DNA of 64,000 nucleotides from Macrostomum lignano (GCA_002269645.1 NIVC01000341.1:62001-126000); one strand, 5' to 3'; shown: positions 1-28,985, numbered from the stretch's first letter. Notes: a model not told the origin generated them from the letters alone. Numbers and translations: made by a program.

Positions 1-494
1 CTGGTCTCTGTTCCATTCCTGCAGTTGCTGTGTCTGAATGGCCGTTTCATTGCGGTGTGCCTCTGCGGTCTGGTCTCTGTTCCATTCCTGCAGTTGCTGT
101 GTCTGAATGGCCGTTTCATTGCGGTGTGCCTCTGCGGTCTGGTCTCTGTTCCATTCCTGCCGTTGCTGAGTCTGAATGGCCGTTTCATTGCGGTGTGCCT
201 CTGCGGTCTGGTCTCTGTTCCATTCCTGCCGTTGCTGAGTCTGAATGGCCGTTTCATTGCGGTGTGCCTCTGCGGTCTGGTCTCTGTTCCATTCCTGCAG
301 TTGCTGTGTCTGAATGGCCGTTTCATTGCGGTGTGCCTCTGCGGTCTGGTCTCTGTTCCATTCCTGCAGTTGCTGTGTCTGAATGGCCGTTTCATTGCGG
401 TGTGCCTCTGCGGTCTGGTCTCTGTTCCATTCCTGCAGTTGCTGTGTCTGAATGGCCGTTTCATTGCGGTGTGCCTCTGCGGTCTGGTCTCTGT
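1..494. repeat. 69-bp tandem repeat, ~7 copies, runs off the left edge
   Basis: Unit ctggtctctgttccattcctgcagttgctgtgtctgaatggccgtttcattgcggtgtgcctctgcggt. ORFs 25..528 and 30..569 are simply its open frames. A 22-nt stretch (attcctgccgttgctgagtctg, 154-175) also occurs at 1220-1241 and 9881-9902. Confidence 0.95.
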
Positions 495-3233
495 ACGACC
501 GAATACGCTTTTCTTTGGAATCATTTAAATGCTCTAATTACTATTATAGTTATAAATAGTGTGGGATAAAAGTACTATTGTTCATTTTTATGTCGATATC
601 TCTTTGATGTGTACCGATTCTGTGGTACCTGTTGCACATTTGCACAGCCTGGCTACAACTTGCAAGTGTCCTTTCTATGCTGCACTGCGGTGTGGGAGCA
701 TGAAGAAACTGCTTGAGTCTTGAAACACCCGTGTGTTTTGAGTCTATAAAACTCTTGCGCTACAATTTTATCAGAAATTCAAACATTTTTTGTAATTTTT
801 ATTATGAGTTTTTGGAGTACGATTTTGTCATTATGCATCTGTGTAGTCCAACATTTGATAATGTGCTGTGGCATTCTCATGGTGGACATGATCCACTGCA
901 GGCTGGGAAGCGGCAGCTTCTCAACTCATTCTGTTAGCAGAAGTAGCATCGCATTTGAGCTCTTGATGTCCCTGTTGGAGACCTCTCTGAGGTTATGGCC
1001 GGCATTTTGACTCGATTTTTATTGTGCTTTGATGAGTAGATCTACCACCTCATGATGGCCATTTTGTGATTCTTGTCACAGTTTGTGCCATTTCTGCTTT
1101 CTGAGGAGAAGAGTTTTTTAGAATAATACTGTAATAAATAATGTGGGATAAAAGTATTTCGTTCTCTCTTTATGCTAGTCAGCGGCATTTCTTTGATCTG
1201 ATTTGCCTCTGATTGTCCTATTCCTGCCGTTGCTGAGTCTGGACTTCTGACTCATTGTGGCGAGCCTCGCCCGTTGCCGCCTGTTTTGTTCACGTCGTTT
1301 TTCTTCCTAATTTGCAGCCATAAGAGGCGTTTGTGCATCTCCAGCTGCATCAGTTGTGATGACGCCGGCTGCAGGTGTCAATGATCTTGTCTGTTCTCAT
1401 AGGCTTCTATTCTGGATTTGTTGTCCTGCTGCAGTGTATCAAATATAAATGGTGTGGGATAAAACTACTTTGTTCTTTGTGTCAGACTCAACGGCAATCT
1501 AAGTTGTGTATCGGCTTTGGCACCTGTTGCACATTTTTATCGTGCTTTGATGAGTAGATCTACCACCTCATGATGGCCATTTTGTAATTCTTGCAACAAT
1601 TTAGGCTTTTTTTCAGTTTCTGAAATTAAAAGTTCTTGTTCTAATTAGTATTGTATGTATAAATAGTGTGGAATAAAAGTACTTTGCTCACTTTTTATGT
1701 CAGAGTCGGCGGCATGTCTTTGATGTGTGTCGCCTCGCTGACATCTGTTGCACAGTTGCACAGCCTGGCCACTACTTGCAAGTGCCCTTTCTGTGCTGCC
1801 TTCACTGCGGTGTCGGGGCATGGAGAAGCTGCTGAGTTCATGTGATATTTTTGCACTTTTAGCGTCTTAAAGAACACGTCGTATGTCTGTCAGTAGTAAA
1901 ACACTTGTTCTTCTGTCAGCTGCAACTTTTGAGCTCTTGCTGTCCCTGTCGGCGGCCTCTCTTTGAGCTTATGGCCGGCATTTTGGCTCGATTTTTATTG
2001 TGCTTTGATGAGTAGATCTACCACCTCATGTTGGCCATTTTGTAATTCTTGTCGCAGTTTGTGCCATTCCATTTCTTAATTGAAACGTTTAAAAATAATT
2101 TTGTAATTTTAAAGTGTGGGATAAGTGTACCTTGTTCTCTTTGTCAGAATTAGTGCATCTCTTTGATGTGTGCCGTCTCTCTCACACCTGTTGCACAGTT
2201 GTGCAGCTTCAATGGAGCCAAAGGCTGTTTTTATTCAGCACTTTTGAACTAAATAAAGAAACATCAGTTAATTTTTCAAAGTAACAAAGTTATTTAAATA
2301 TGCTTTTTTATTTGCCATACTTATTTGCCCTCATGCTTCTGGGGCAGCAATGCAGTTTTAAGGTAGATCAGATTCAGACACTGTTCACAGTGCCAGTGCG
2401 AGGCTTTAGGATGATCAGCCCCCCAATGCCACAGAAATTCAGACGACCAGTTAAATTGCTTTCTTTCATTCAATCTGTCAGTGATTTATTTAATTTTACT
2501 GATTGACAAAGTTTTCATTTCAATACCCAAATCATGCTTTTATGAGTCGCGGCCGTCTCAGCGCTGTGCTTGAAGTCACGGTCTACTGTGAGCTGTGAGC
2601 TACAGTACAATTTAAAGCAGTCGCTCAACGAAGCAAAAGCGTGCTGTAGAAAATCTGTTTGCAGATGCGCAGTCACCTCAAGTCCTACCGTACGGCGGCG
2701 CTTCACCTTGGCGGCTTCTCTGTTTAAAGCGTGCTTCAGCAGGTCTCGAATTGCAGCCTCTACCTAAACCTCAAAGGGCCTCCGGATCTCATCAAGGTGG
2801 GATCGAGCTTGGGAACTTTGAGCAGTAAAGACCTGTGGTCGGATAATTCTTTTTAGTGGTTTAAAACTCAATTTTTTAAAGTTTGATCACCTAACCATTT
2901 TAGCTCAATGTGCTCAACTCGCTTCTCACTACTGACCTAATGAGTAGTATTCAGTTCAAACAATTTTAGCCAACTTCTAAGTAATACAATTATCAGTTGG
3001 AAAGTTTAGTTTAGCAACAATTATAAATATACTTTAGGAACAGCCTCTGATTGTAAACATATTTTACCGAACTGGTCATGCTTTATCGTTTTTGTCAGAC
3101 CAAACTTACTTTGCGTTGAGACGTTTTGGCTTCTCAACCCATTCTGATTTACAGAGTAGCATCAAGTTTAAGCTTTTGATGTCCCTGTCGGTGGCCTCTC
3201 TGAGGCTATGGCCGGCATTTTGGCTCCATTTTT

Positions 3234-4596
3234 ATTGTGCTTTGATAAGTAGATCTACCACCTCATGATGGCCATTTTGTATTGTGCTTTGATAAGTAGA
3301 TCTACCACCTCATGATGGCCATTTTGTATTGTGCTTTGATGAGTCGATCTACCACCTCATGATGGCCATTTTGTATTGTGCTTTGATGAGTAGATCTACC
3401 ACCTCATGATGGCCATTTTGTATTGTGCTTTGATGAGTCGATCTACCACCTCATGATGGCCATTTTGTATTGTGCTTTGATAAGTAGATCTACCACCTCA
3501 TGATGGCCATTTTGTATTGTGCTTTGATGAGTCGATCTACCACCTCATGATGGCCATTTTGTATTGTGCTTTGATGAGTCGATCTACCACCTCATGATGG
3601 CCATTTTGTATTGTGCTTTGATGAGTCGATCTACCACCTCATGATGGCCATTTTGTATTGTGCTTTGATGAGTCGATCTACCACCTCATGATGGCCATTT
3701 TGTATTGTGCTTTGATAAGTAGATCTACCACCTCATGATGGCCATTTTGTATTGTGCTTTGATGAGTCGATCTACCACCTCATGATGGCCATTTTGTATT
3801 GTGCTTTGATGAGTCGATCTACCACCTCATGATGGCCATTTTGTATTGTGCTTTGATGAGTAGATCTACCACCTCATGATGGCCATTTTGTATTGTGCTT
3901 TGATGAGTCGATCTACCACCTCATGATGGCCATTTTGTATTGTGCTTTGATGAGTAGATCTACCACCTCATGATGGCCATTTTGTATTGTGCTTTGATGA
4001 GTCGATCTACCACCTCATGATGGCCATTTTGTATTGTGCTTTGATGAGTAGATCTACCACCTCATGATGGCCATTTTGTATTGTGCTTTGATGAGTCGAT
4101 CTACCACCTCATGATGGCCATTTTGTATTGTGCTTTGATAAGTAGATCTACCACCTCATGATGGCCATTTTGTATTGTGCTTTGATGAGTCGATCTACCA
4201 CCTCATGATGGCCATTTTGTATTGTGCTTTGATGAGTCGATCTACCACCTCATGATGGCCATTTTGTATTGTGCTTTGATGAGTCGATCTACCACCTCAT
4301 GATGGCCATTTTGTATTGTGCTTTGATGAGTCGATCTACCACCTCATGATGGCCATTTTGTATTGTGCTTTGATGAGTAGATCTACCACCTCATGATGGC
4401 CATTTTGTATTGTGCTTTGATAAGTAGATCTACCACCTCATGATGGCCATTTTGTATTGTGCTTTGATGAGTAGATCTACCACCTCATGATGGCCATTTT
4501 GTATTGTGCTTTGATGAGTCGATCTACCACCTCATGATGGCCATTTTGTATTGTGCTTTGATGAGTCGATCTACCACCTCATAATGGCCATTTTGT
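3234..4596. repeat. 47-bp minisatellite, 29 copies (ankyrin-core derived)
   Basis: Unit attgtgctttgatgagt(a/c)gatctaccacctcatgatggccattttgt; 1363 bp = 29 x 47. Confidence 0.97.
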
Positions 4597-7585
4597 GATT
4601 CTTTTCACAATTTGTGCCATTTTTAGCTCCTAAAGTAAAGTTCCTGTTTTAATTAGTATTGTATTTATAAATTCTGTGGGATAAAAGTACTTTGTTTACA
4701 TTTTAATGTCATAGTCGGCGGCATGTCTTTGATTTGTGCCGCTTCGGTTGCACAGTCTGGCTACAACTTGCAAGTGTCCTTTCTCTGCTGCCTTCACTGC
4801 GGTGTGGAAGTATGGAGAAGCTGCTTGAGTTTGTCAGCTCTCATTCAAAATCATACTGTAACAGGTAGGATTTTGCGTACTGCCTGCACCTTCTGCTTAC
4901 ATCGGATAGCAAAGAATTGAATTCAAAGCGCAGTATTTCACGGTTCTACAGCCCAGCCGAGGCAGTGGCCATGCCTTTGGGCCTGCAGAGGCGGGCGAGA
5001 GAAAAGAGTGAAGCGAGCGCCTCCACTGTCTGTTCGTTTTATTTAAAACACTGAGGAGCATACGAGTGGGAACGGAAATTCCTATAGGCTACATAGAACG
5101 AATATGAGCGCTCACCATTCGCAAATATGATGGCATTCTATGCAGTTCTGATTGAGTTTACCGTGTTTTTTAGCTACATTTTTGTCGTGAATTTTTTCTA
5201 CGCCTGAGTATCTGTACTCACTGAGAATTTCTTGTCACAATTTATAATTTCAGTTTCTGAAATTAAAAGTTCTTGTTCTAATTAGTATTGTATTTATTTA
5301 TTGTGTGGGATAAAAGTACTTTGCTCACTTTTTATGTCAGAGTCGGCGGCATGTCTTTGATGTGTGCCGGCTCTGACACCTGTTTCACAGTTGCATAGCC
5401 TGGCCACTACTTGCAAGTGCCCTTTCTGTGCTGCCTTCACTGCGGTGTCGGGGCATGGAGAAGCAGCAGAGTTCATGTGACGTTTTTGCACTTTTAGCGT
5501 CTTGAAACACCCGTGTACTTTGTGTCAGTTGTAATACTCTTGTCGTACTTTTGTCAGCGCCATTTTATAAGAAGTTTAAAGATGTTTTGGAGTTTTATTA
5601 TAATTTTGCGGAGTACGATTTGTTATGCATCCGTGTGGTTCTTATGGTTTTGCTATCTCTAGCATTTGATAATGTGCTGTGGGGATCTTATGGTGGACAT
5701 GATCCACTGTATGCTGGGAAGCGGCAGCTTCTCAACTTATTCTGTTAGCAGAAGTAGCATCAATTTTGGGCTCTTGATGTCCCTGTCGGCGGCCTCTTTG
5801 AGGTTATGGCCGGCATTTTGACTCGATTTTTATTGTGCTTTGATGAGTAGATCTACCACCTCATGATGGCCATTTTGTGATTCTTGTCACAATTTGTGCC
5901 ATTTCTGTTTTCTGAGGAGAAAAGTTCTTATTCTTATTAGTATTGTACTTATAAATAGTGTGGAATAAAAGTACTTTTTTGTTGTCTTTATATCAGAGTT
6001 GGTGGCAACTCTTATATGTGCGTGTGGGCTCTCGGAAGTTAGCATCAAGTTTGAGCATTTTATGTCACTGTCGGCGTTCTCTGTTTGAGTTGTCGGCCGG
6101 CTTTTGGCTCCATTTTTATCGTTCATTATTGAGTAGAGCTACCAACTCATGATGGCCATTTTGTGAATCTTGTCACAATTTGATCCATTTAAAACTGTTG
6201 ATTTTTCATTAATCACTGTGGGATGAATGTACTTTTGTTCACTTTTTTGTCACAGTGTACAGTTTCTTTTTGAGCGTACTTTGTTAAGTTTTTCATGTCA
6301 GAGTCGGCGGTGTCTTTGATGTGTGCCGCCTTGCTGTTACCTGCTGCACAGTTGTACAGCCTGGCTACAACTTGCAAGTGTCCTTTCTGTGCTGCCTTCA
6401 CTGCGCTGTGTGGGAGCACGCAGAAGCTGCTTGAGTTCGTCAGCTCTCATTCAAACTCAAATCTGAAGCTGTGTAATATTTTTCTAAACGACATTCTTGG
6501 TTGTGATTTTTTACGCGTGAGTATCTGTAATATTCACTGAGAATTTCTTGTCACAATTTGTTTCATTTCAATTTTTGATGTTAAAAGTTGTTCTGATTAG
6601 TATTGTATTTAATATTTAATAACTCGTAAATAGCGTGGGATAAAAGTACTTTGTTAACTTGTTATGTCAGAGTGGGCGGTACCTCTTTGATGTGTACCGT
6701 CTCTCCAACACCTGTTGCACAGTTTTGTAGCTTCTATGGTGCTGAATGCTTGTTAGGACTTTTGAACTAGATAAATTTAATAAACGACTATTTGTATGAC
6801 AAAATAACAATAATATTAAAATAAGCTTCCTATTTGCTTTACTTGTACTTTTCGCCTTAACGCTTCTTTGTCTGCAATGTAGTTTTAAAGGTAGATTTAG
6901 GTTTAGTTTCTCACTTTAGTACCCTAGGAATATCAAATACTCGTATTGCAGACTTTATTGTTGTACTTAAATTTAAGATATGCTATCAGATCCATACACT
7001 TCACTGTACCAGTGTGCCTGTGTGCCAGTCCTGTGACTAACTCTCAATCTGGATGAGCTCCCCTCAGAATGCTCAGCCCTCTAAAGCTACTGAAATGCAG
7101 ACGGCCAGATAAATTAGTAAATTTTCCTGATTGACAAAGTTTTCATTTGAATCTCCAAATCATGCTTTTATGATGCACGGTGTCTCTGCGCTGTGATTGA
7201 AGCCACAGCTCTACGGCTCACTGTAAGCGGGATCGAGCTCAGGACCTTTGAGCAGCGAAGACCTCGTGTGAACGGAAATTCTTTTATTGGTTTAAAAGTA
7301 TTCAGTTCAAACAATTTTAGCCAACTTCTAAGTGATACAATTATCAGTTGGAAAGTTTAGTTTAGCAACAATTATAAATATATTTTAGGAACAGCCTCTG
7401 ATTGTAAACATATTTTACCGAACTGGTCATGCTTTATCGTTTTTGTCAGACCATACTTACTTTGCGTTGAGACGTTTCGACTTCTCAACCCATTCTGATT
7501 AACAGAAGTAGCATCAAGTTTGAGCTTTTGATGTCCCTGTCGGCGGCCTCTCTGAGGTTATGGCCGGCATTTTGGCTCCGTTTTT

Positions 7586-7914
7586 ATTGTGCTTTGATGA
7601 GTAGATCTACCACCTCATGATGGCCATTTTGTATTGTGCTTTGATGAGTAGATCTACCACCTCATGATGGCCATTTTGTATTGTGCTTTGATGAGTCGAT
7701 CTACCACCTCATGATGGCCATTTTGTATTGTGCTTTGATGAGTAGATCTACCACCTCATGATGGCCATTTTGTATTGTGCTTTGATGAGTCGATCTACCA
7801 CCTCATGATGGCCATTTTGTATTGTGCTTTGATAAGTAGATCTACCACCTCATGATGGCCATTTTGTATTGTGCTTTGATGAGTCGATCTACCACCTCAT
7901 GATGGCCATTTTGT
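7586..7914. repeat. 47-bp minisatellite, 7 copies
   Basis: Same unit; 329 bp = 7 x 47. Confidence 0.95.
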
Positions 7915-10900
7915 GATTTTTGTCACCATTTTTTCATTTCCGTTCTTTGAAGTGAAATGTTTTTTGAAATGATTTTGTAGTTTTAAGTGTGGGGTAAAAG
8001 TACTTCACTTGTTATGGAAGAATCTGTGGCATCTTTGATGTGTGCCGTCTTGCTGACACCTTTAGCAGTGTTGTGTAGCTTTCATTGCGCTAAATACTGC
8101 TTGTGTATCGGATTCTTGAAGTAAATAAATAAGCAACAGTAAATATGACAAAATAACAATAATGATATTAAAATAATCTTCTTATTTGCCATACTTATTT
8201 GCCCTCATGCTTCTCTGTCTGCAATGTAGTTTAAAGGTATATTTTAAGTTTGGCTATTCACTTATATACCTTTGGTATATCAAAATATTGTAGTGTTCAA
8301 GTTTGACTTAAATTTAAGCTGTTATCAGATACAGACACTGTTCACAGTGCCAGTGTGCCTGTGCGAGACCCCAGTCCTGTGCTTAACTCTTAATATTGAT
8401 GAGCTGTTCTTAGGATGCTCAGCCTTTTAATGCCATTAAAACGCAGATTGCCGGTTAAATTAGTAAATTTTACTGATTCATTTAAATCACTAAATTTTGC
8501 TTTTCAGAGTGAGTCACAGCCGTCTCAACGGCTGGCTGTAAGCGGAATTGAGCTCAGGACCTTTGAGCAGTAAAGACTTCTTGTGAACGGAGCTGGTTTT
8601 TAGTGGTTTAAAACAGCCACTTTGTTAAAGTTTGACTATCCAACCATTTTAGGTCAAGGTACTGAACTCGCTACTCACTATTGAGGTCACTAGTAGCAGA
8701 CTGTAAAATGGAACACATATAACAGCACTCAGAATAAGCTACGAGAATTCAGTATTGTAGCGCTTGGGGTATGTTTCGTCAAAAAAAATTGTTGTTGAAA
8801 GTCTTCCAAAGACAATTATAAAAAATCTTTAGGAAAAGCCTCTGATTGTAAACATAATTTTACCGAACTGGTCATGATTTTCGTTTTTGTCAGACCATAA
8901 TTACTGTGCAGTGAGACGTTACGGCGTCTCAACCCATTCTGATTAACAGAGTAGCATCAAGTTTGAGCTTTTGATGTCCCTGTCGGTGGCCTCTCTGAGG
9001 TTATGGCCGGCATTTTGGCTCCGTTTGTATTGTGCTTTGATAAGTAGATCTACCACCTCATGATGGCCATTTTGTGTTCATTGCCACAAATTGTGCCAAT
9101 TTAATTTTCTAAAGTGAAAAGTTTTGCTGCCTTATTTTTTACGTAAACACTTAACAGTGTGGGATAAAAGTACTTTTGTTCGATTTTTGTCAGAGTAGGC
9201 ATCTCTTTAATGTGTAGTGGCTCTCTGACACCTGTTTCACAGTTGCACAGCTTGGCCACTACTTCCAAGTGTCCTTTCTGTGCTGCCTTCACTGCGGTGT
9301 CGGGGCACGGAGAAGCTGCTGAGTTCATGTGATATTTTTGCACTTTTAGCGTCTTGAAACACCCGTGTACTTTGTGTCAGTTGTAATACTCTTGTCGTGC
9401 TTTTTTCAGCGCCATTTTATAAGAAATTTAAAAAAAATTGTAATTTTATTAATATTCTGCTGAGTACGATTTTGTTATGCATCTGTGGTTCTTATGGTTT
9501 CGCTATCTCCAACATTTGATAATGTGCTGTGGCATTCTCATGGTGGACATGATCCACTGCATGCTGGGAAGCGGCAGCTTCTCAACTCATTCTGTTAGCA
9601 GAAGAAGTATCGCATTTGAGCTCTTGATGTCTCTGTCAGCGGCCTCTCTGAAGTTATGGCCGGCATTTTGACTCCATTTTCATCCTGCTTTGATGAGTAG
9701 ATCTACCACCTCATAATGGCCATTTTGTGGATCTTGTCACAATTTGTGCCATTTCTGTTTTCTGAGGAGAAGAGTTTTTTAGAATAATACTGTAATAAAT
9801 AATGTGGGATAAAAGTATTTCGTTCTCTCTTTATGCTAGTCAGCGGCATTTCTTTGATCTGATTTTTCTCTGATTGTCCTATTCCTGCCGTTGCTGAGTC
9901 TGGACTTCTGACTCATTGTGGCGAGCCTCGCCCGTTTCCGCCTGTTTTGTTCACGTCGTTTTTCTTCCCAATTTGCAGCCATGAGAGGCGTTTGTGCATC
10001 TCCAGCTGCATCAGTTGTGATGACGCCGGCTGCAGGTGTCAATGATCTTGTCTGTTCTCATAGGCTTCTATTCTGGGTTTGTTGTCCTGATGCAGTGTAT
10101 CAAATATAAATGATGTGGGATAAAAGTACTTTGTTCTTTGTGTCAGAGTCAACGGCAATCTAAGTTGTGTGTTGGCTTTGACACCTGTTGCACATTTTTA
10201 TCGTGCTTTGATGAGTAGATCTACCACCTCATGATGGCCATTTTGTGATTCTTGCAACAATTTGTGCCGTTTCAGTTTCTGAAATTAGAAGTTCTTGTAC
10301 TAATTAGTATTGTATTTATAAATAGTGTGGGATAAAAGTACTTTGCTCACTTTTTATGTCAGAGTCGGCGGCATGTCTTTGATGTGTGTCGCCTCGCTGA
10401 CACCTGTTGCACAGTTGCACAGCCTGGCCACTACTTGCAAGTGCCCTTTCTGTGCTGCCTTCACTGCGGTGTCGGGCATGGAGAAGCTGCTGAGTTCATG
10501 TGATATTTTTGCACTTTTAGCGTCTTAAAGAACACGTCGTATGTCTATCAGTAGTAAAACACTTGTTCTTCTGTCAGCTGCAACTGTATGCAATTGAAGA
10601 ATAACTTTTGTAATTTTATTGTAATTTTCCTCGGTATGATTTTGTTATTATGCATCCGTGTGGTTCTTGTGGTTTCGCTTTCTGCAGCATTTGATAATGT
10701 GCTGTGGGGATCTTATGGTGGACATGATCCACTGCATGCTGGGAAGCGACAGCTTCTCAACTCATTCTGTTAGCAGAAGTAGCATCGCATTTGAGCTCTT
10801 GATGTCCCTGTCGGCGGCCTCTCTGAGTTGTCAGCCGGCATTTTGGCTCCGTTTCTATCGTGCTTTGACAAGTAGATGTACCACCTCATGATGGCCATTT

Positions 10901-12888
10901 TGTGATTCTTGTCACAGTTTGCCCTTTTAGTATTTTCAAGCGAAAAGTTTCTGTTGTAATTAAATTTGTTATGAATACTGTGGGATAAATGTACTTTTAC
11001 TTTTTTGTCTGTCGGCGGCATCTTTGATGTGTGCCGTCTTGCTGACACCTTTAGCAGTGTTGTGTAGCTTTCATTGCGCTAAATACTGCTTGTGTATCGG
11101 ATTCTTGAAGTAAATAAATAAGCAACAGTAAATATGACAAAATAACAATAATGATATTAAAATAATCTTCTTATTTGCCATACTTATTTGCCCTCATGCT
11201 TCTCTGTCTGCAATGTAGTTTAAAGGTAGATTTTGAGTTTAGCTATTCACTTATATACCTTTGGTATATCAAAATATTGTAGGGTTCAAGTTTGACTTAA
11301 ATTTAAGCTGTTATCAGATACAGACACTGTTCACAGTGCCAGTGTGCCTGTGCGAGACCCCAGTCCTGTGCTTAACTCTTAATATTGATGAGCTGTTCTT
11401 AGGATGCTCAGCCTTTTAATGCCATTAAAACGCAGATTGCCGGTTAAATTAGTAAATTTTACTGATTCATTTAAATCACTAAATTTTGCTTTCATGAGTG
11501 AGTCACTGCCGTCTCAGCGCTGTGATTGAAGCCACAGCTCAGCGGCTGGCTGTGAGCGGAATCGAGCTCAGGACCTTTAAACAGCGAAGACCTCTTGTGA
11601 ACGAGACTGGTTTTTAGTGGTATAAAACTGCCACTTTGTTAAAGTTTCACTATTCAATCATTTTAGGTCAAGGTACTGAACTCGCTACTCACTACTGAGG
11701 TCATAAGTAGCAAACTGTAAAATGAAACGTATAACAACATTCAGAATAAGCTAGGAAAATGTCATCCAAAGACAATTATAAAAATCTTTAGGAAAAACCT
11801 CTGATTGTAAACATGATTTTACCGAACTGGTCATGCTTTTTCATTTTTGTCAGACCAAACCTACTGTGCTTTGAGACGTTCGGCTTTTCAACCCATTCTG
11901 ATTAACAGAAGTAGCATCAAGTTTGAGCTTTTGATGTCCCTGTCGGCGGCCTCTCTTTGAGGCTTTTGACTCCATTTTTATTGTGCTTTGATGAGTAGAT
12001 CTACCACCTCATGATGGCCATTTTGTGATTCTCGTCACAATTTGATCCATTTAAACTGTTTTGATTTTTCATTAATCACTGTGGGATAAATGTACTTTTG
12101 TTCACTTTTTATGTCAGAGTGTACAGTTTCTCTTTGAGCGTACTTTGTTAAGTTTTTCATGTCAGAGTCGGCGGCATCTTTGAAGTGTGCCGCCTCGCTG
12201 ACACCTGTTTCACAGTTGCACAGCCTGGCTACTACTTGCAAGTGCCCATTCTGTGCTGCCTTCACTGCGGTGTTGGAGTACGGTGAAGCTGCCTGAGTTC
12301 TTCAACTCTCATTCAAACTCCAATCTGAAACCGTGTGTAATATGTTTTAGTTTTGCATCTTATCCACCTCAATCATGGCTGTTGAACAAAATTCTTTCTT
12401 TGTCTCACTGTTCTCAGTAAGAATTTGTGGGACATCCAAGTGGGATCTGTCACTGTGCTTTGATGCGACAACTTTCTCACGTGGTGTGCTCACGGCAGTA
12501 ACACGGGCTGTTGCTGCAATTGATGTCTCTGACGCCATTCAGCACTCTGCCACCAAATTGACTTTATTGATTTATTGTGCTTTGATCAGCCTGCTCACGA
12601 CTTTATGATGACCATTCTGTGCTTCTCATCCTGTGCTAGGCTGCTTTGCAGATGGGATGGGAGGCGCAGCAGCAAAGGTTCCTGCCTTTTTGTTGCCGTT
12701 AAGTTCTGTTAATATTGCAAGTATAATTAGTGTGGGTTAAAAGTATTTTTTGTTCTCTTTATATCAGGGTTGGTGGCAACTCTTATATGTGTGTGTGTGG
12801 CCTCGGAAGTTAGCATCAAGTTTGAGCTCTTTATGTCACTGTCGGCGTTCTCTGTTTGAGTTGTCGGCCGGCTTTCTGCTCCATTTTC

Positions 12889-13546
12889 ATCGTGCTTTGA
12901 TGAGTAGATCTACCACCTCATGATGGCCATTTTGTATTGTGCTTTGATGAGTAGATCTACCACCTCATGATGGCCATTTTGTATTGTGCTTTGATGAGTC
13001 GATCTACCACCTCATGATGGCCATTTTGTATTGTGCTTTGATGAGTAGATCTACCACCTCATGATGGCCATTTTGTATTGTGCTTTGATGAGTAGATCTA
13101 CCACCTCATGATGGCCATTTTGTATTGTGCTTTGATGAGTAGATCTACCACCTCATGATGGCTATTTTGTATTGTGCTTTGATGAGTAGATCTACCACCT
13201 CATGATGGCCATTTTGTAATGAGCTTTGATGAGTAGATCTACCACCTCATGATGGCCATTTTGTATTGTGCTTTGATGAGTAGATCTACCACCTCATGAT
13301 GGCCATTTTGTATTGTGCTTTGATGAGTAGATCTACCACCTCATGATGGCCATTTTGTATTGTGCTTTGATGAGTAGATCTACCACCTCATGATGGCCAT
13401 TTTGTATTGTGCTTTGATGAGTAGATCTACCACCTCATGATGGCTATTTTGTATTGTGCTTTGATTAGTAGATCTACCACCTCATGATGGCCATTTTGTA
13501 TTGTGCTTTGATGAGTAGATCTACCACCTCATGATGGCCATTTTGT
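12889..13546. repeat. 47-bp minisatellite, 14 copies
   Basis: Same unit; 658 bp = 14 x 47. Confidence 0.95.
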
Positions 13547-16500
13547 GACTCTTGTCACAATTTGTGCCATTTCTGTTTTCTGAGGAGAAAAGTTCATATT
13601 CTTATTAGTATTGTACTTATAAATAGTGTGGAATAAAAGTACTTTTTTGTTCTCTTTATATCAGAGTTGGTGGCAACTCTTATGTGTGTGGGCTCTCGGA
13701 AGTTAGCATCAAGTTTGAGCATTTTATGTCACTGTCGGCGTTCTCTGTTCGAGTTGTCGGCCGGCTTTTGGCTCCATTTTTATCGTGCTTTGATGAGTAG
13801 ATCTACCAACTCATGATGGCCATTTTGTGATTCTCGTCACAATTTGATCCATTTAAATCTGTTTTGATTTTTCATTAATCACTGTGGGATAAATGTACTT
13901 TTGTTCACTTTTTACGTCAGAGTGTACAGCTTCTCTTTGATGTGTGCCGTCTCGCTGACACCTGTTTCACAGTTGCACAGCCTGGCTACTACTTGCAAGT
14001 GCCCATTCTGTGCTGCCTTCACTGCGGTGTCGGGGCATGGAGAAGCTGCTTGAGTTCGTCAGCTCTCATTCAAACTCAAATCTGAAACCGTGTGTAATGT
14101 TTTAGTTTTGCATCTTATCCAACTCAATCATGGCTGTTGAACAAAATTATTTGTTTGTCTCACTGTTCTCAGTGAGAATTTGTGGGACATCCAAGTGGGA
14201 TCTGTCACTGTGCTTTGATGCGACAACTTTCTCACGTGGTGTGCTCACGGCAGTAACACGGGCTGTTGCTGCAATTGATGTCTCTGACGCCATTCAGCAC
14301 TCTGCCACCAAATTGACTTTATTGATTTATTGTGCTTTGATCAGCCTGCTCACGACTTTATGATGACCATTCTTTGCTTCTCATCCTGTGCTAGGCTGCT
14401 TTGTAATATTGTAATATTGTAAATAACAGGTTATTTTCCTATTATCTTCTGCTTACAAGATACAAAGACTTTAAAACGCGCTGGCCTCCAATGACCCTAT
14501 TATTAGTGTAAGGCTCGCGTCTCAGAATTCGCCGTACCGGAAAGTTTTCAAGGCAGTGTATTTTATAGCCAACCAGAAAGCATCCTCCCCCTCCAAAGCA
14601 GTTGCTGCGAGTCTTCTGTGTCACGCGTTCGCAGGCTGCTGGCTTGGCCTTCAAACCTCAGCTTTGTTATTTGTCCTTTAGTCTAGAGCTGGTCTGCCTG
14701 GATAGCCCCAGTCAAAATGAAAGGAGGCCGTTGTTTTTTCGCTTCGATGTAAGCACTTTTCCAGTCATAAATCATGAGTAGTGTGGGATAAAAGTATTTT
14801 TCACACTTTATGTTGAGAGTCGGCGGCATTTCTTTGATTTGTGCCGCCTCGCTGACACCTGTTGCACAGTTGTACAGTCTGGCTACAACTTGCAAGTGTC
14901 CTTTCTCTGCTGCATTTACTGCGTTATGGCAGCAGCTAAAAGGTGCCGAGTTCCTGCTTTTTTAGTTTTGAAACGTGTAAACTGCTTCACTTCTTTTTAA
15001 CAGCTACAATTAGATAAGAAATGGATGTAATGACCATTGTGTGGGATTTAATATTTTCACCTGCAGTGCGGTTTTCTGTTGCGCACCTGTTGCATTCTGT
15101 GACTTCACTAGATAATAATTTATGCGATTCTCATGGTGAACATGATCCACTGCATGCTGGGAAGCGACAGCTTCTCAACTCATTCTGTTAGCAGAAGTAG
15201 CATCGCATTTGAGCTCTTGATGTCCCTGTCGGCGGCCTCTCTGAGGTTATGGCCGGCATTTTGACTCCGTTTCTATCGTGCTTTGATGAGTCGATCTACC
15301 ACCTCATGATGGCCATTTTGTGATTCTTGTCACAGTTTGCCCTTTTAGTATTTTCAAGCGAAAAGTTTCTGTTGTAATTAAATTTGTTATGAATACTGTG
15401 GGATAAATGTACTTTTACTTTTTTGTCTGTCGGCGGCATCTTTGATGTGTGCCGCCTTGCTGTTACCTGTTGCACAGTTGCACAGCCTGGCTACAACTTG
15501 CAAGTGTCCTTTCTGTGCTGCCTTCACTGCGGTTTTGGAGCATGGAGAAGCTGCTTGAGTTCGTCAGCTCTCATTCAAACTCAAATTTGAAACCGTGTGT
15601 AATATGTTTTAGTTTTGCATCTTATCCACCTCAATCATGGCTGTTGAACAAAATTCTTTGTTTGTCTCACTGTTCTCAGTGAGAATTTGTGAGATATCCA
15701 AGTGGGATCTATCACTGTGCTTTGATGCGACAACTTTCTCACGTGGTGTGCTCACGGCAGTAACACGGGGTGTTGCTGCAATTGGTGTCTCTGACGCCAT
15801 TCAGCACCCTGCCACCAAATTGACTTTATTTATTTATTGTGCTTTAATCAGCCTGCTCACGACTTTATGATGACCATTCTGTGCTTCTCATCCTGTGCTA
15901 GGCTGCTTTGCAGATGGGATGGGAGGCGCAGCAGCAAAGGTTCCTCCCTTTTTGTTGCCGTTAAGTTCTGTTAATATTGCACGTATAATTGTGTGGGTTA
16001 AAAGTATTTTTTGTTCTCTTTATGTCAGGGTTGGTGGCAACTCTTTTATGTGTGTGGCCTCTCGGAAGTTAGCATCAAGTTTGAGCATTTTATGTCACTG
16101 TCGGCGTTCTCTGTTTGAGTTGTCGGCCGGCATTTGGCTCCATTTTCATCGTGCTTTGATGAGTAGATCTACCACCTCATGATGGCTATTTTGTGGTTTT
16201 TGTCACCATTTTTTCATTTCCGTTCTTTGAAAGGAAATGTTTTTTGAAATGATTTTGTAGTTTTAAGTGTGGGGTAAAAGTACTTCACTTGTTATGGAAG
16301 AATCTGTGGCGTCTCTTTGATGTGTGCCGTCTTGCTGACACCTTTAGCAGTGTTGTGTAGCTTTCATTGCGCTAAATACTGCTTGTGTATCGGATTCTTG
16401 AAGTAAATAAATAAGCAACAGTAAATATGACAAAATAACAATAATGATATTAAAATAATCTTCTTATTTTCCATACTTATTTGCCCTCATGCTTCTCTGT

Positions 16501-17254
16501 CTGCAATGTAGTTTAAAGGTATATTTTAAGTTTGGCTATTCACTTATATACCTTTGGTATATCAAAATATTGTAGTGTTCAAGTTTGACTTAAATTTAAG
16601 CTGTTATCAGATACAGACACTGTTCACAGTGCCAGTGTGCCTGTGCGAGACCCCAGTCCTGTGCTTAACTCTTAATATTAATGAGCTGTTCTTAGGATGC
16701 TCAGCCTTTTAATGCCATTAAAACGCAGATTGCCGGTTAAATTAGTAAATTTTACTGATTCATTTAAATCACTAAATTTTGCTTTTCTGAATGAGTCACA
16801 GCCGTCTCAACGGCTGGCTGTAAGCGGAATCGAGCTCAGGACATTTGAGCAGTAAAGACCTCTTGTGAACGGAACTGGTTTTTAGTGGTTTAAAACTGCC
16901 ACTTTGTTAAAGTTTGACTATCCAACCATTTTAGGTCAAGGTACTGAACTCGCTACTCACTATTGAGGTCATAAGTAGCAAACTGTAAAATGAAACATAT
17001 AACAACATTCAGAATAAGCTGCGAAAATGTCATCCAAAGACAATTATAAAAATCTTTAGGAAAAACCTCTGATTGTAAACATGATTTTACCGAACTGGTC
17101 ATGCTTTTTCATTTTTGTCAGACCAAACTTACTGTGCTTTGAGACGTTCGGCTTTTCAACCCATTCTGATTAACAGAAGTAGCATCAAGTTTGAGCTTTT
17201 GATGTCCCTGTCGGTGGCCTCTGAGGTTATGGCCGGCATTTTGGCTCCATTTTT

Positions 17255-17813
17255 ATTGTGCTTTGATAAGTAGATCTACCACCTCATGATGGCCATTTTG
17301 TATCGTGCCTTGATAAGTAGATCTACCACCTCATGATGGCCATTTTGTATCGTGCTTTGATTAGTAGATCTACCACCTCATGATGGCCATTTTGTATCGT
17401 GCTTTGATGAGTAGATCTACCACCTCATGATGGCCATTTTGTATTGTGCTTTGATGAGTCGATCTACCACCTCATGATGGCCATTTTGTATTGTGCTTTG
17501 ATGAGTAGATCTAGCACCTCATGATGGCCATTTTGTATTGTGCTTTGATGAGTCGATCTACCACCTCATGATGGCCATTTTGTATTGTGCTTTGATGAGT
17601 CGATCTACCACCTCATGATGGCCATTTTGTATCGTGCTTTGATGAGTCGATCTACCACCTCATGATGGCCATTTTGTGCTTTGATAAGTAGATCTACCAC
17701 CTCATGATGGCCATTTTGCATCGTGCTTTGATAAGTAGATCTACTACCTCATGATGGCCATTTTGTATTGTGCTTTGATGAGTCGATCTACCACCTCATG
17801 ATTGCCATTTTGT
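17255..17813. repeat. 47-bp minisatellite, 12 copies (one with a 5-bp deletion)
   Basis: Same unit; 559 bp = 11 x 47 + 42. Confidence 0.93.
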
Positions 17814-19030
17814 GATTCTTGTCACAGTTTGTGCCATTTCAGTTTCTGAAGTTAAAAGTTGTTATAATTAGTATTGTATTTATAAATAGTGTGGGATAAA
17901 AGTACTTTGCTCACTTTTCATGTCAGGGTCGGCGGCATGTCTTTGATGTGTGCCGTCTCGCTGACACCTGTTGCACAGTTGCACAGCCTGGCTACAACTT
18001 GCAAGTGTCCTTTCTGTGCTGCCTTCACTGCGGTTTTGGAGCACGGAGAAGCTGCTTGAGTTCGTCAGCTCTCATTCAAACTAATATCGTAAACTGTGTG
18101 TATTTCCATGTTTAGTTTTCCATCTTATCCATCTCAATCATTGCTGTTGAACAAAATTCTTTGTTTGTCTCACTGTTCTCAGTGAGAATTTGTGGGATAT
18201 CCAAGTGGGATCTGTCACTAAGCTGGGATGCGACAGCTTTCTCACGTGGTGTGCTCACGGCAGTAACACGGGCTGTTGCTGCAATTGATGTCTCTGACGC
18301 CATTCAGCACTCTGCCACCAAATTGACTTTATTGATTTATTGTGCTTTGATCAGCCTGCTCACGACTTTATGATGACCATTCTGTGCTTCTCATCCTGTG
18401 CTAGGCTGCTTTGCAGATGGGATGGGAGGCGCAGCAGCAAAGGTTCCTGCCTTTTTGTTGCAGTTCAGTTCTGTTAATATTGCAAGTATAATTAGTGTGG
18501 GATAAAAGCACTTTTTGTTCTCTTTATATCAGGGTTGGTGGCAACTCCTTTATATGTTTGGGCTCTCGGAAGTTAGCATCAAGTTTGAGCATTTTATGTC
18601 ACTGTCGGCGTTCTCTGTTTGAGTTGTCGGCCGGCATTTGGCTCCATTTTCATCGTGCTTTGATGAGTAGATCTACCACCTCATGATGGCTATTTTGTGG
18701 TTCCTTTCACAATTCACAGTTTGTTCCATTGTTAAAGTTTTTGCTTGTTCATGTAATAACTGTGGGATAAATGTACTTTTGTTCGCTTTTTATGTCATAG
18801 TGTACGGCTTCTCTTTGAGTGTTCGGCCTGCATTTTGACTCTATCGATTTTTTGCGCTTTAAGCTGATCGAGTCGTTCTTTAAGTTCAATTTATTAGCTA
18901 GTAAGAAAACTGTTAGCAGTTTATGAAATAGAACTATTAGTAAAATAAAACTTGATTGATTTATTGACTCTATTTTAGTGAGACGCCTATGGGGCAGAGA
19001 CTGAGCTTCCTTTCAAACATTCTCGACAGG

Positions 19031-19794
19031 ATGACAGTCGCCCATTCCAGATATCCCTCTAGGGCAGTGACAGTCCCCCTTTCCAAACTCCTCTAGGGCA
19101 GTGACAGTCCCCAATTCCAGATACCCCTCTAGGGCAGTGACAGTCCCCAATTCCAAACCCCTCTAGGGCAGTGACAGTCCCCAATTACAAATCCCTCTAG
19201 GGCAGTGACAGTCCCCAATTCCAGATACCCCTCTAGGGCAGTGACAGTCCCCAATTCCAGATACCCCTCTAGGGCAGTGACAGTCGCCAATTACAAACCC
19301 CTCTAGGGCAGTGACAGTCCCCAATTACAAACCCCTCTAGGGCAGTGACAGTCCCCAATTACAAACCCCTCTAGGGCAGTGACAGTCCCCAATTACAAAC
19401 CCCTCTAGGGCAGTGACAGTCCCCAATTACAAACCCCTCTAGGGCAGTGACAGTCGCCAATTACAAACCCCTCTAGGGCAGTGACAGTCCCCAATTACAA
19501 ACCCCTCTAGGGCAGTGACAGTCCCCAATTACAAACCCCTCTAGGGCAGTGACAGTCCCCAATTACAAACCCCTCTAGGGCAGTGACAGTCCCCAATTAC
19601 AAACCCCTCTAGGGCAGTGACAGTCCCCAATTACAAACCCCTCTAGGGCAGTGACAGTCCCCAATTACAAACCCCTCTAGGGCAGTGACAGTCCCCAATT
19701 ACGAACCCCGCTAGGGCAGTGACAGTCCTCCATTACAAACCCCTCTAGGGCAGTGACAGTCCCTAATTCCAGATACCCCTCTAGGGCAGTGACA
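19031..19794. repeat. 34/36-bp minisatellite upstream of DHX16
   Basis: Unit ccctctagggcagtgacagtccccaattacaaac, ~22 copies. Confidence 0.95.
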
Positions 19795-19905
19795 GGTCCT
19801 TAGTTCAATAATCTTTTAAAATGGAACATCAACGAGAACTGTATTTGTACCTTTTATGAATAGAAAGCCTCTAGGTGAAGTTCTCAGCTGACTGTTCACT
19901 CAACT

Positions 19906-27178: not shown

Positions 27179-27418
27179 CGCTTATTTGGTAAACTACGAG
27201 TATAAAGGATTTTCTGCGTTTAATAAATGTAACTGTTTATTATATACTTCTATTTTCTGCGATTCTCAATGCTATCATGTTTGCAAATGATAATACGGTA
27301 CATATGCTTGCTGTTAATTTGCATTTCAACTTTATTGGTAACTTATGTATGCGCTAATTATCATATTGAATCCGTGTTGTTGGTTTTCATTATCATTTTT
27401 ATAAAATACCAAATGTAG

Positions 27419-27908
27419 AATAGATCACTAAGCAGGTAGATCACTGATCAGATAGATCACTGAGCAGGTAGATCACTAAGCAGGTAGATCACTGAGCAGG
27501 TAGATCACTAAGCAGGTAGATCACTGAGCAGGTAGATCACTTAGCAGGTAGATCACTGAGCAGGTAGATCACTAAGCCAGGTAGATCACTGAGCAGGTAG
27601 ATCACTGAGCAAGTAGATCACTGAGCAGGTAGATCACTGAGCAGGTAGATCACTGAGCAAGTAGATCACTGAGCAAGTAGATCACTGAGCAGGTAGATCA
27701 CTGAGCAAGTAGATCACTGAGCAGGTAGATCACTGAGCAAGTAGATCACTGAGCAGGTAGATCACTGAGCAGGTAGATCACTGAGCAAGTAGATCACTGA
27801 GCAGGTAGATCACTGAGCAAGTAGATCACTGAGCAGGTAGATCACTGAGCAAGTAGATCACTGAGCAGGTAGATCACTGAGCAAGTAGATCACTGAGCAG
27901 GTAGATCA
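27419..27908. repeat. 16-bp minisatellite, same family as 24532-24965
   Basis: Unit gtagatcactgagcag. Confidence 0.95.
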
Positions 27909-28044
27909 TCTATCACTCTGTCTGCTTGTCTTCTACTATCTACCTGGATTTATTTTCGATTGGAAAAGAAAGCCAATGTCTTGAAGCCTACGCAACCATC
28001 TTGCAGCTCATCCGCAGTTTGCAAGAGAGAGACAGCAAGTCACA

Positions 28045-28578: not shown

Positions 28579-28985
28579 ATTATTTAAATAGGATTTTCAT
28601 AGCTTACTAGTTTAGTCATTTGATGTCCTTATGCTGCACTGCTGTTTGATTTAAGTTGAAATTTGTCTATGGCCAAACTTTTAACAAGTAAGCCTCTACG
28701 CCTTCTTCAAATCAAAAGTAATTAAAAAACAAAGATACTCTTCCAACTTGTCATCTGCCCTCTGTTGCACTTCTTCTATCGTTTTTTTTTACGCATGAGC
28801 TTCATTATACGTTCTTCGTTCCTGTTGTTACACTTGTTTTTGGATAGCATAGAGAGAGATAGAGTGTAGTTAAAATAGTCTATGGTCGAAGAGAGGAAGA
28901 ACCGAGAGGGAGGATAGTCAGTGTAGTTGAAATAGTCTATGTTCACCGCGAGAGAGGAGGGGGGCAAAAAAGAGTCAGTGCAGTT

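What the first reader, a model, noticed from the sequence alone, without database searches (positions are those of the whole stretch)
500..18870. ~18-kb non-coding array built almost entirely from scrambled ankyrin-repeat coding fragments
Seen: the recurring modules translate on the minus strand to ankyrin pieces in roughly collinear order (AAQKGHLQVVARL > IKxHAADSDIKS > PTLFI > SQNGHHEVVDLLIKAQ > ADRDIKSSN). Two diverged core copies (caa aat ggc cat cat gag gtg gta gat cta ctc atc aaa gca at 1021-1067; cag aat ggt cat cat aaa gtc gtg agc agg ctg atc aaa gca at 12574-12625) differ at 5 synonymous codons and 3 non-synonymous codons, which points to a protein-coding ancestry. Every piece is now broken by stops, frameshifts or 30-70-nt spacers, yet the pieces have been amplified dozens of times. 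Established: the ankyrin consensus. Inference: a multi-ankyrin gene was converted into an expanding non-coding locus rather than simply decaying.
Basis: partly seen in the sequence, partly recalled or inferred. Interest (0 to 1): 0.85.

Follow-up and report, generated by a model that had tools for sequence, protein, structure and literature searches.

The report
Amplified relic of an ankyrin-repeat gene
An 18.9-kb one-directional block of repeats upstream of an animal DHX16 gene is the broken, non-coding remnant of an ankyrin-repeat gene copied many times in tandem, a tidy example of a known process rather than a new kind of element.

Summary
The repeats are real. Six recurring modules (9 to 76 copies each) lie only on the minus strand, only between 495 and 18,900, and always in the same order. 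92.6% of that stretch occurs at least twice. Four 47-bp minisatellite arrays sit at equivalent positions in different units.

The ankyrin ancestry is supported, though weakly per piece. Ank is the only Pfam family hit, on the minus strand only and below cut-off. An unedited 88-codon open stretch finds 74 proteins in 1.84 billion (best E 2.5e-11), and all six checked are multi-ankyrin proteins. Old paralogous modules differ mainly at synonymous sites. Copies of one module differ evenly across codon positions, so amplification followed loss of coding.

Recognisable ankyrin pieces cover about a third of the DNA, not almost all. They are collinear, not scrambled. At least one "spacer" is itself ankyrin-type coding sequence, and five 700-870-nt segments look like retained introns.

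No parent gene was found, and transcription could not be tested. The adjacent 45 kb is 53% minisatellite, so tandem amplification is a local habit, not a special fate of this gene.

Verdict: new member of a known kind, moderate-to-low interest.

The parts
495..18870 (-). Composite one-directional tandem array. Units of about 0.7-2.5 kb are built from modules M1-M2-M3-M4(n)-M5-M6 plus a 200-250-nt or 700-870-nt intervening segment. It is a mosaic of duplications at 74-98% identity.
   Evidence: Self-BLAST dot plot and long HSPs, module map, 92.6% multi-copy.
1..494 (-). 69-bp satellite, 7.2 copies at 99% identity, cut by the window edge. It derives from a piece of the array unit (compare 1207-1297 and 9868-9958).
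   Evidence: TRF. A shared exact 22-mer CAGACTCAGCAACGGCAGGAAT occurs only in these places, with 0 expected by chance. Alignment.
3226..4596 (-). 47-bp minisatellite, 29 copies. Each monomer is the M4 fragment (NGHHEVVDLLIKAQ). Mostly variant A (GATCGACTC), mixed with B and C.
   Evidence: TRF, monomer typing. 47 is not a multiple of 3, so there are 2 stops per 141 nt.
7581..7914 (-). 47-bp minisatellite, 7 copies (variants A, B, C). The segment containing it duplicates the one containing the 3226-4596 array: 7297-7918 vs 2946-3565 at 97.7%.
12881..13546 (-). 47-bp minisatellite, 14 copies, mostly variant B (GATCTACTC).
17247..17813 (-). 47-bp minisatellite, 12 copies. The most diverged array (93% matches, one 42-nt monomer).
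10203..10467 (-). Representative half-unit: M1 10420-10467 (AVKAAQKGHLQVVARL; the Thr codon lies just upstream), M2 10347-10384 (HAADSDIKS), M3 10318-10342 (YFYPTLFI), M4 10203-10247 (SQNGHHEVVDLLIKA). M1 and M4 share a frame 210 nt apart. M2 and M3 are in the other two frames.
10715..10995 (-). Representative second half-unit: M3 10971-10995, M4 10860-10904, M5 10790-10821 (EAADRDIKSSN), M6 10715-10786.
12038..12301 (-). 88-codon stop-free stretch RTQAASPYSNTAVKAAQNGHLQVVARLCNCETGVSEAAHFKDAADSDMK..., used unedited as the homology query.
   Evidence: phmmer gave 74 hits at E<=1e-3, best 2.5e-11. All six hits checked are multi-ankyrin proteins. BLASTP aligns M1 plus its 'spacer' to repeats of P0001.
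12572..12619 (-). M4' (QNGHHKVVSRLIKAQ*), an old paralogue of M4. Further copies are at 15834-15881 and 18337-18384, with a variant near 14330-14380.
16397..17132 (-). Intron-like segment that starts GTAAGT and ends with a T-rich tract plus AG. Homologous segments are at 11104-11864, 8115-8904, 6759-7460 and 2241-3109.
   Evidence: Alignment of the five long units, boundary motifs.
9968..10003 (-). Extra ankyrin-like piece GDAQTPLMAAN (a TPLxxA motif), in frame with NAAD*HKERTKYFYPTLFI downstream. Second copy at 1310-1342.
   Evidence: Stop-free stretch 10057-9839 and the sequence itself.
14404..14766 (-). Single-copy insert inside the array. It carries GGCTATAAAATAC (TATA-like) about 100 nt upstream of TCTT|GTAAGCAGAAG.
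4863..5175 (-). Second single-copy insert. It ends CCGAT|GTAAGCAGAAGG...CCTGTTACAG and shares only the 13-mer TGTAAGCAGAAG with the insert at 14404-14766.

Best explanation
The block is the decayed, non-coding remnant of an intron-containing gene for a multi-ankyrin-repeat protein, that is, an unprocessed pseudogene. It lies head-to-head with the DHX16 gene.

Shown:
- The pieces are ankyrin-family sequence on one strand and in a fixed order.
- They no longer form an open frame.
- Different module types (M1, M4, M4', M2, M5) diverged from one another mainly at synonymous sites, as repeats of a working protein do.
- Copies of the same module type diverged without regard to codon position.

Inferred sequence of events:
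1. The gene lost its frame.
2. The dead unit was multiplied by unequal exchange or replication slippage at nested scales. These are a 47-bp monomer (up to 29 copies), a 69-bp monomer, 0.7-2.5-kb units, and multi-kb blocks.
3. The 47-bp array probably started by slippage between the imperfect direct repeat AATCACAAAATGG / AATA-AAAATGG that brackets single-copy M4.

The locus most likely has no sequence-specific function. It reflects the same tandem-duplication habit that fills the neighbouring introns with minisatellites.
For: - Fixed order and single strand of six modules, confined to 495-18,900.
- All self-similarity is direct, and 92.6% of the region is multi-copy.
- Ank/Ank_2 are the only Pfam families, on the minus strand only.
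- The joined pieces score 25.7 bits, above the Ank cut-off of 21.1.
- Exhaustive phmmer with unedited translation gave 74 hits, best E 2.5e-11, and all six checked are multi-ankyrin proteins.
- The alignment extends through the supposed spacer.
- Between paralogous module types, single-base codon differences are mostly synonymous: M4/M4' 5 synonymous to 1 not, M2/M5 3 to 0. That gives P(>=8 of 9)=4e-5 against an expected synonymous fraction of about 0.22.
- Among copies of one module type, variable sites spread evenly over codon positions. A 63-codon open frame kept in 3 of 4 copies shows 4 synonymous to 11 non-synonymous changes.
- A stop follows IKAQ in 18 of 20 stand-alone M4 copies.
- GT...T-rich-AG boundaries are conserved in 5 of 5 long units.
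- Four 47-bp arrays sit at homologous positions with different copy numbers and variant mixes.
- The 69-bp satellite derives from a unit piece.
- The neighbouring 45 kb is 53% minisatellite, while its exons are intact, so assembly error is not the cause of the broken frames.
Against: - No parent or close relative was found. Two word-index protein searches gave 0 hits, and exact DNA patterns gave 0 hits in the metagenome, prokaryote-genome and viral collections.
- Unedited translations never reach Pfam's curated cut-offs, and single stop-free pieces give no Pfam hit.
- The phmmer scores sum several repeats of each target against one roughly 25-residue part of the query.
- The stop after IKAQ is shared by M4 and its old paralogue M4'. 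This fits poorly with their coding-era divergence unless gene conversion or an exon end is invoked.
- About two-thirds of the DNA has no recognisable ankyrin similarity.
- Transcription, small RNAs and chromatin state are unknown.
Confidence: 0.65

Rival explanations
1. Same origin, but the array is now a working non-coding locus. It would be a one-strand source of long or small RNAs (in the manner of Su(Ste)/Stellate) that regulates related ankyrin genes or the adjacent DHX16 promoter.
For: - All copies share one orientation.
- The modules are gene-derived.
- A TATA-like box lies about 100 nt upstream of a GTAAGC donor-like site in the unique insert 14404-14766, and a matching GTAAGCAGAAG is in the insert 4863-5175.
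- A 16-nt block ATCAAAGCACAATAAA is kept identical between old paralogues.
Against: - No target gene was found.
- Copies drift neutrally.
- No Rfam match even at E<=1.
- The neighbouring DNA makes arrays out of everything, so amplification needs no function.
- No expression data are available.
Confidence: 0.1
2. The units are copies of a non-autonomous mobile element, for example a Helitron-like element that captured an exon-intron fragment of an ankyrin gene and piled up locally.
For: - Gene fragments with an intron-like piece are what such captures look like.
- The intron-like segment holds a stretch resembling a tRNA/SINE T-arm (GGTCCTGAGCTCGATTCCGC).
- Other minisatellite families in the window recur at several sites.
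Against: - No inverted repeats at all.
- No transposase, reverse-transcriptase or helicase hit in any of the six frames of 4600-12900.
- No tRNA or SINE match.
- No copy of any module in the other 45 kb.
- Copies are head-to-tail with shared, shifting breakpoints, as in unequal exchange.
Confidence: 0.1
3. The ankyrin resemblance is coincidental. This would be an ordinary complex satellite whose A-rich strand happens to translate into ankyrin-like words.
For: - All unedited Pfam scores are below the curated cut-offs, and their E-values sum many copies of the same short match.
- Single pieces give no hit.
- No parent was found.
Against: - phmmer against 1.84 billion proteins gave E 2.5e-11, with all six checked hits being ankyrin proteins.
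- The plus-strand control is empty.
- Three separate helix modules share xQxGHxxVVxxL while differing at synonymous positions.
- Loop-like (AADxDIKS) and TPL-like pieces fall in the expected order.
Confidence: 0.08
4. It is still a live protein-coding gene whose exons are joined by splicing, possibly unusual splicing.
For: - M1 is preceded by a pyrimidine-rich tract plus CGCAG and followed by CAACAG|GT in 10-12 of 12 copies.
- The host uses GT-AG introns.
- M1 can be joined in frame to M4 through one GT...AG pair (by inspection).
Against: - By inspection of the consensus unit, no GT-AG path keeps M1, M2, M3, M4 and M5 in their ankyrin frames without meeting a stop.
- The stop after IKAQ has no GT donor before it.
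- The 47-bp arrays carry 2 stops per 141 nt in every phase.
- Substitutions among copies are neutral.
Confidence: 0.05

Closest known systems
Satellite and minisatellite DNAs born from part of a pre-existing functional sequence (for example rDNA intergenic-spacer-derived or transposon-derived satellites; review PMC5615363)
   Same: A short piece of an older sequence becomes the monomer of a head-to-tail array. It then grows and is homogenised by unequal crossing-over or slippage. Here the 47-bp and 69-bp monomers are cut out of the larger unit.
   Different: The source here is a protein-coding exon fragment (an ankyrin helix), not rDNA spacer or a transposon. The arrays are small (0.3-1.4 kb) and nested in a larger repeat. 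Genome-wide abundance is unknown.
Su(Ste)/Stellate-type tandem arrays of a degenerate gene copy in Drosophila (from my own knowledge)
   Same: A coding gene's descendants are amplified in tandem, lose coding capacity and all point one way.
   Different: Su(Ste) is defined by piRNA production against a known target. Neither small RNAs nor a target could be examined here, and copies here drift neutrally.
Segmentally duplicated ankyrin-gene and pseudogene clusters in primates (POTE, ANKRD20A, ANKRD36 families; from my own knowledge)
   Same: Ankyrin-repeat genes with introns are multiplied by segmental duplication, and many copies are pseudogenes.
   Different: Those units are tens of kb, still recognisable gene by gene, dispersed near centromeres, and have known intact members. 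Here units are 0.7-2.5 kb, strictly tandem and heavily decayed, with no intact member known.
Canonical ankyrin-repeat proteins (Pfam Ank, Ank_2 and related families)
   Same: The helix motif xQxGHxxVVxxL, the loop AADxDIK and TPL-like starts fall in the right order. The best relatives have repeats of the type AAENGHLQVVQYLCSLPTxxGVDPSA.
   Different: There is no open frame and only sub-threshold HMM scores on unedited translation. Recognisable helices are about 70 codons apart rather than 33.

Membership tests
Ankyrin repeat (Pfam Ank clan) | Match to an Ank-family profile at or above the curated cut-off | tested here: inconclusive
   Unedited translations give Ank 20.7/16.7/14.9 bits (cut-off 21.1) and Ank_2 24.1 (cut-off 27.3). 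One unedited unit gives 17.6. Only the hand-joined pieces pass, at Ank 25.7.
Ankyrin repeat (Pfam Ank clan) | Significant similarity to bona fide ankyrin proteins | tested here: met
   phmmer of unedited 88 aa against 1.84 billion proteins gave 74 hits at E<=1e-3, best 2.5e-11. All six hits checked carry Ank_2/Ank at E 1e-26 to 1e-169. The plus-strand control is empty.
Ankyrin repeat (Pfam Ank clan) | Uninterrupted reading frame with roughly 33-residue periodicity | tested here: not met
   Each frame has about 300-350 stops, and no reassigned code helps. Modules sit in different frames, and helices are about 70 codons apart.
Satellite / minisatellite DNA | Head-to-tail arrays of a short unit with high identity between copies | tested here: met
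   The 47-bp unit forms arrays of 29, 7, 14 and 12 copies at 93-97% matches. The 69-bp unit has 7.2 copies at 99%.
Satellite / minisatellite DNA | Family present at many sites or forming a sizeable genome fraction | not testable with these tools
   The host genome is not searchable. There are no copies in the other 45 kb of the window and no exact match in public metagenome, prokaryote or viral collections.
Unprocessed (duplicated) pseudogene | Homology to a protein family plus disabling stops and frameshifts | tested here: met
Unprocessed (duplicated) pseudogene | Retained intron(s) | tested here: inconclusive
   Five homologous 700-870-nt segments begin GTAAGT/GTAGGT/GTAATT and end with a T-rich tract plus AG. 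There is no transcript or parent gene to confirm this.
Unprocessed (duplicated) pseudogene | Identifiable functional parent gene | tested here: not met
   0 hits in two word-index searches of 5.8 billion protein clusters. The phmmer hits are only 35-57% identical over 20-40 residues. The host genome itself was not available.
Gene-derived small-RNA cluster (Su(Ste)-like) | Small RNAs from the array and a complementary target gene | not testable with these tools
   No expression data are available, and no target was found in the protein searches.
Transposable element | Terminal inverted or long terminal repeats, element-encoded proteins, dispersed copies | tested here: not met
   0 inverted HSPs. 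No transposon protein family in six frames of 4600-12900. No tRNA or Rfam match. No copies elsewhere in the window. Genome-wide dispersal is untestable.

The most novel reading that the evidence does not exclude
The one-directional array would be a gene-derived regulatory locus. It would be transcribed from the TATA-like promoter in the insert at 14404-14766 (or read through from outside) and processed into small RNAs. These would silence a family of ankyrin genes, making it an animal counterpart of Su(Ste)/Stellate outside Drosophila. The identical ATCAAAGCACAATAAA block would then be a conserved processing or poly(A) signal.
Probability: 0.08. Interest if true: 0.65.

Novelty: new member of a known kind. 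Interest (0 to 1): 0.3.

Why it matters
It captures several stages of satellite birth in one place:
- an old coding repeat;
- its decay;
- the excision of 47-bp and 69-bp monomers from inside the dead unit;
- their expansion to different sizes at equivalent positions.

This makes it a useful teaching case for how exon sequence can seed tandem DNA. It is also a warning for annotation, because six-frame searches will report ankyrin fragments here that are not a gene.

The broader oddity is the neighbourhood. Introns of ordinary housekeeping genes are half-filled with dozens of unrelated minisatellites. If that holds genome-wide, it points to an unusually active tandem-duplication process in this animal.

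Tried and rejected
- **Alternative genetic code.** TAA, TAG and TGA are all frequent in all six frames, so this was rejected.
- **tRNA/SINE or other structured RNA in the unit.** ARAGORN found 0. Rfam found 0 at gathering thresholds and 0 at E<=1.
- **Hairpin in the 47-mer.** It contains the palindrome GTAGATCTAC, but DNA folding gives z about 0 on both strands, so a hairpin does not explain the expansion.
- **Close parent protein.** The direct 129-aa translation and the joined 64-aa peptide gave no hits in the word-index search.
- **Exact DNA matches.** The M4 and M1 cores gave none in the metagenome (2 scans), prokaryote-genome and viral collections.
- **Host identification.** An exact look-up of the DHHC ORF was not on record. 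The best named hits to the DHX16 exon are flatworms at 83-85%, a beetle at 82% and plants at 75-78%. The host is an animal, possibly a flatworm, but this is not decided.
- **Small or conserved ORFs inside the array.** The MNSAASPCPDTAVK... ORFs are 12/75/60/48 codons in four copies. The 63-codon MASETS... frame shows 4 synonymous to 11 non-synonymous changes. Both were rejected as genes.
- **Pfam on ten individual stop-free stretches.** Nothing meaningful.
- **Canonical-splice reconstruction of an ankyrin ORF.** Done by hand on the consensus unit. No path keeps all modules in frame. A general dynamic-programming search was not run because GT/AG pairs are too frequent for it to discriminate.
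- **Homology between the two unique inserts.** Only a shared 13-mer.
- **Literature.** Three searches found no description of an ankyrin-derived satellite.

Full report
**Setting**

The window is eukaryotic nuclear DNA. From 19.9 kb onward the plus strand carries ordinary genes with GT-AG introns:
- A DHX16/PRP2-type DEAH helicase. Its 23420-24319 exon scores 494 bits against human DHX16, and its 25006-25830 exon carries HA2 domains.
- A DHHC palmitoyltransferase at 34398-35540.
- A DeoC-like aldolase.

The best named relatives of the helicase exon are flatworms (83-85%), with a beetle at 82% and plants at 75-78%. The host is therefore an animal, possibly a flatworm, but this is not settled. 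Tandem Repeats Finder covers 53% of 18,901-64,000 in 34 separate arrays, most of them inside introns. The finding lies directly upstream of DHX16 and points away from it.

Largely yes.
- A self-comparison of 1-19,500 gave 2653 HSPs, none inverted.
- 92.6% of 495-18,900 has at least one more copy within the region, and nothing in it resembles the other 45 kb.
- Every hit is on the minus strand and inside 495-18,900.
- The order is always M1 -35 nt- M2 -4- M3 -about 70- M4(n) -38- M5 -3- M6, followed by either 200-250 nt or 0.9-1.0 kb before the next unit.
- The pieces are therefore collinear, not scrambled.
- They cover 32-35% of the DNA, not almost all of it.
- Four arrays of a 47-bp monomer, which is the M4 piece, sit at the M4 position of four different units with 29, 7, 14 and 12 copies.

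**Is it ankyrin?**

Five lines of evidence agree, each modest on its own.
1. The three minus-strand frames of 4600-12,900 (stops written as X) hit only Ank and Ank_2 in Pfam (E 5.6e-5 to 0.03). All scores are below the curated cut-offs, and none of the individual stretches passes alone.
2. The three plus-strand frames of the same DNA, equally repetitive, hit nothing below E 0.09. Repetition alone therefore does not create such hits, and no transposon protein is present on either strand.
3. An unedited 88-codon open stretch (12038-12301, minus) was scored by phmmer against 1.84 billion representative proteins. It found 74 at E<=1e-3, the best at 2.5e-11. All six hits examined are multi-ankyrin proteins. 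These scores add up several repeats of each target against one roughly 25-residue part of the query.
4. BLASTP against the best hit aligns AAQNGHLQVVARLCNCETGVSEAAH with repeats of the form AAENGHLQVVQYLCSLPTxxGVDPSA.
5. Hand-joined pieces reach 25.7 bits on Ank, above the cut-off of 21.1. One unedited unit reaches only 17.6, and single pieces reach nothing.

An extra TPL-type start (GDAQTPLMAAN, 9968-10003 and 1310-1342) lies in frame with a loop-plus-YPTLFI piece.

**Coding past, non-coding present**

Comparisons between different module types show codon-structured divergence.
- M4 against M4': 8 identical codons, 5 synonymous single changes, 1 non-synonymous single change and 3 multi-base changes.
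- M2 against M5: 4 identical, 3 synonymous, 0 non-synonymous single and 1 multi-base.
- M1 against M4: no identical codon, but six amino acids (Q, G, H, V, V, L) kept through synonymous differences.
- With about 22% of possible single changes being synonymous, 8 of 9 has P = 4e-5. Counting only codon position, 8 of 9 isolated changes at third positions has P of about 1e-3 (my arithmetic).

By contrast, copies of the same module type differ evenly over codon positions: 16/20/23 for M1 with its extension and 7/6/7 for M5. In the M1 helix core alone, hand counting gives 8 of 12 single-base variants at third positions, a weak trace at best.

Further evidence for the present non-coding state:
- A 63-codon open frame kept in three of four copies shows 4 synonymous to 11 non-synonymous changes.
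- Stops are frequent in every frame under any code.
- The longest open runs (88-102 codons) are about what chance gives for 18 kb.
- 18 of 20 stand-alone M4/M4' copies carry a stop right after IKA(Q/R/G).
- The 47-bp arrays have two stops per 141 nt in every phase.
- The neighbouring genes have clean 1-kb exons, so assembly error is not the cause.

The reading that fits is that the module types diverged while the protein was in use, and the unit was multiplied after it broke.

**Gene structure of the ancestor**

In the five long units, the segment after M6 begins GTAAGT (or GTAGGT, GTAATT) and ends 700-870 nt later in a long T-rich tract followed by AG. After that, a truncated M1-like piece resumes. 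This looks like a retained intron, so the source was genomic DNA rather than a retrocopy. Conservation does not drop sharply at these boundaries, as expected if nothing is selected now.

**How it grew**

The duplications are nested and of different ages.
- 47-mers are 97-98% alike within an array.
- Kilobase units are 81-97% alike.
- The oldest pairs are 74-77% alike.
- Blocks offset by 7.7-8.7 kb are 94-96% alike.

Arrays 3226-4596 and 7581-7914 share monomer variants A, B and C and flanks that are 97.7% identical, so they descend from one array that then changed in length. Array 12881-13546 is almost pure variant B.

Single-copy M4 is bracketed by the imperfect direct repeat AATCACAAAATGG ... 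AATA-AAAATGG, 46-47 nt apart. Three of the four arrays still end in AAAATGG. This is a plausible slippage substrate, but the link is inferred rather than shown.

The 69-bp satellite at 1-494 shares an exact 22-mer and further similarity with a piece of the unit at 1207-1297 and 9868-9958. It is a second monomer cut from the same unit, and the structure runs off the left end of the window.

**What could not be done**

No parent gene was found.
- Two word-index searches gave nothing.
- Exact DNA patterns gave nothing in the metagenome, prokaryote-genome or viral collections.
- The host genome and transcriptome were not available.

By hand, no GT-AG path through the consensus unit keeps all modules in their ankyrin frames.

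**Loose ends**

The stop after IKAQ and the 16 nt ATCAAAGCACAATAAA are identical in M4 and its old paralogue M4', although the 35 nt upstream differ at 14 positions. Two explanations would fit, and neither was shown:
- a gene-conversion tract after loss of coding;
- an ancestral exon or message end, since the block contains AATAAA.

Two single-copy inserts (14404-14766 and 4863-5175) share only TGTAAGCAGAAG. The first has a TATA-like box about 100 nt upstream of it, which is the only hint of a transcription start.

**Comparison and verdict**

The locus works like other satellites born from a piece of an older functional sequence and grown by unequal exchange (review PMC5615363). It also resembles gene-derived tandem arrays such as Su(Ste) and the duplicated ankyrin pseudogene clusters of primates (the last two from my own knowledge).
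- It meets the tests for minisatellite DNA and for a disabled homologue of a protein family.
- It fails those for an intact ankyrin protein and for a transposable element.
- Those for a small-RNA cluster could not be applied.

It is a new member of a known kind: interesting as a clear record of exon-to-satellite conversion, but not surprising in a region where more than half of the non-coding DNA is already tandem arrays.

Noticed in passing
window 18901-64000: 53% of this stretch is minisatellite: 34 merged arrays with periods of 4-69 bp (most 12-69), most of them inside introns of ordinary genes (DHX16, a DeoC-like aldolase and others) whose roughly 1-kb exons are intact. This density is unusual and may be a property of the whole genome.
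   Followed up: partly
window 35557-36519, 47254-47634, 52136-52370; 24531-24943 and 27421-27908; 26389-26864 and 29794-30037; 30759-31214 and 31825-33096: Several minisatellite families recur at separate sites, often in different introns or genes. One example is the 28-bp unit GCTGGGCCAGCCTCCCAGAGTGTCAGTT at three places. This suggests either spread by a carrier element or repeated local duplication.
   Followed up: no
window 1-494: A 69-bp satellite (7.2 copies, 99% identity) runs off the window start. Its monomer derives from a piece of the ankyrin-array unit at 1207-1297 and 9868-9958.
   Followed up: yes
window 14404-14766 and 4863-5175 (minus strand): Two single-copy inserts inside the array share only the 13-mer TGTAAGCAGAAG, which is donor-like (GTAAGC). 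The first has GGCTATAAAATAC about 100 nt upstream, a possible promoter plus first exon. The second is followed by a 45-nt GTAAG...CCTGTTACAG intron-like piece.
   Followed up: partly
window 18115-18303, 15612-15800, 12350-12538 (minus strand); the copy at 14105-14293 has a stop: An ATG-started 63-codon open frame (MASETSIAATARVTAVSTPREK...) is kept in three of four copies. Its substitutions are 4 synonymous to 11 non-synonymous and it has no Pfam hit, so it is not under coding constraint.
   Followed up: yes
window 19906-30000 (plus strand): The DHX16 orthologue has few, long exons (about 0.5-1 kb each) separated by 0.4-1.3-kb introns made largely of tandem repeats. Its first coding exon starts about 1 kb from the end of the ankyrin array, with a 34-bp array (19032-19795) in between.
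   Followed up: partly
window 16830-16900, 11560-11630, 8560-8620, 7230-7290 (minus strand): The intron-like segment contains a conserved stretch (ACCACTAAAAACCAG...GGTCCTGAGCTCGATTCCGCTTACAG) that resembles the T-arm end of a tRNA-derived SINE. Neither ARAGORN nor Rfam recognises it.
   Followed up: partly
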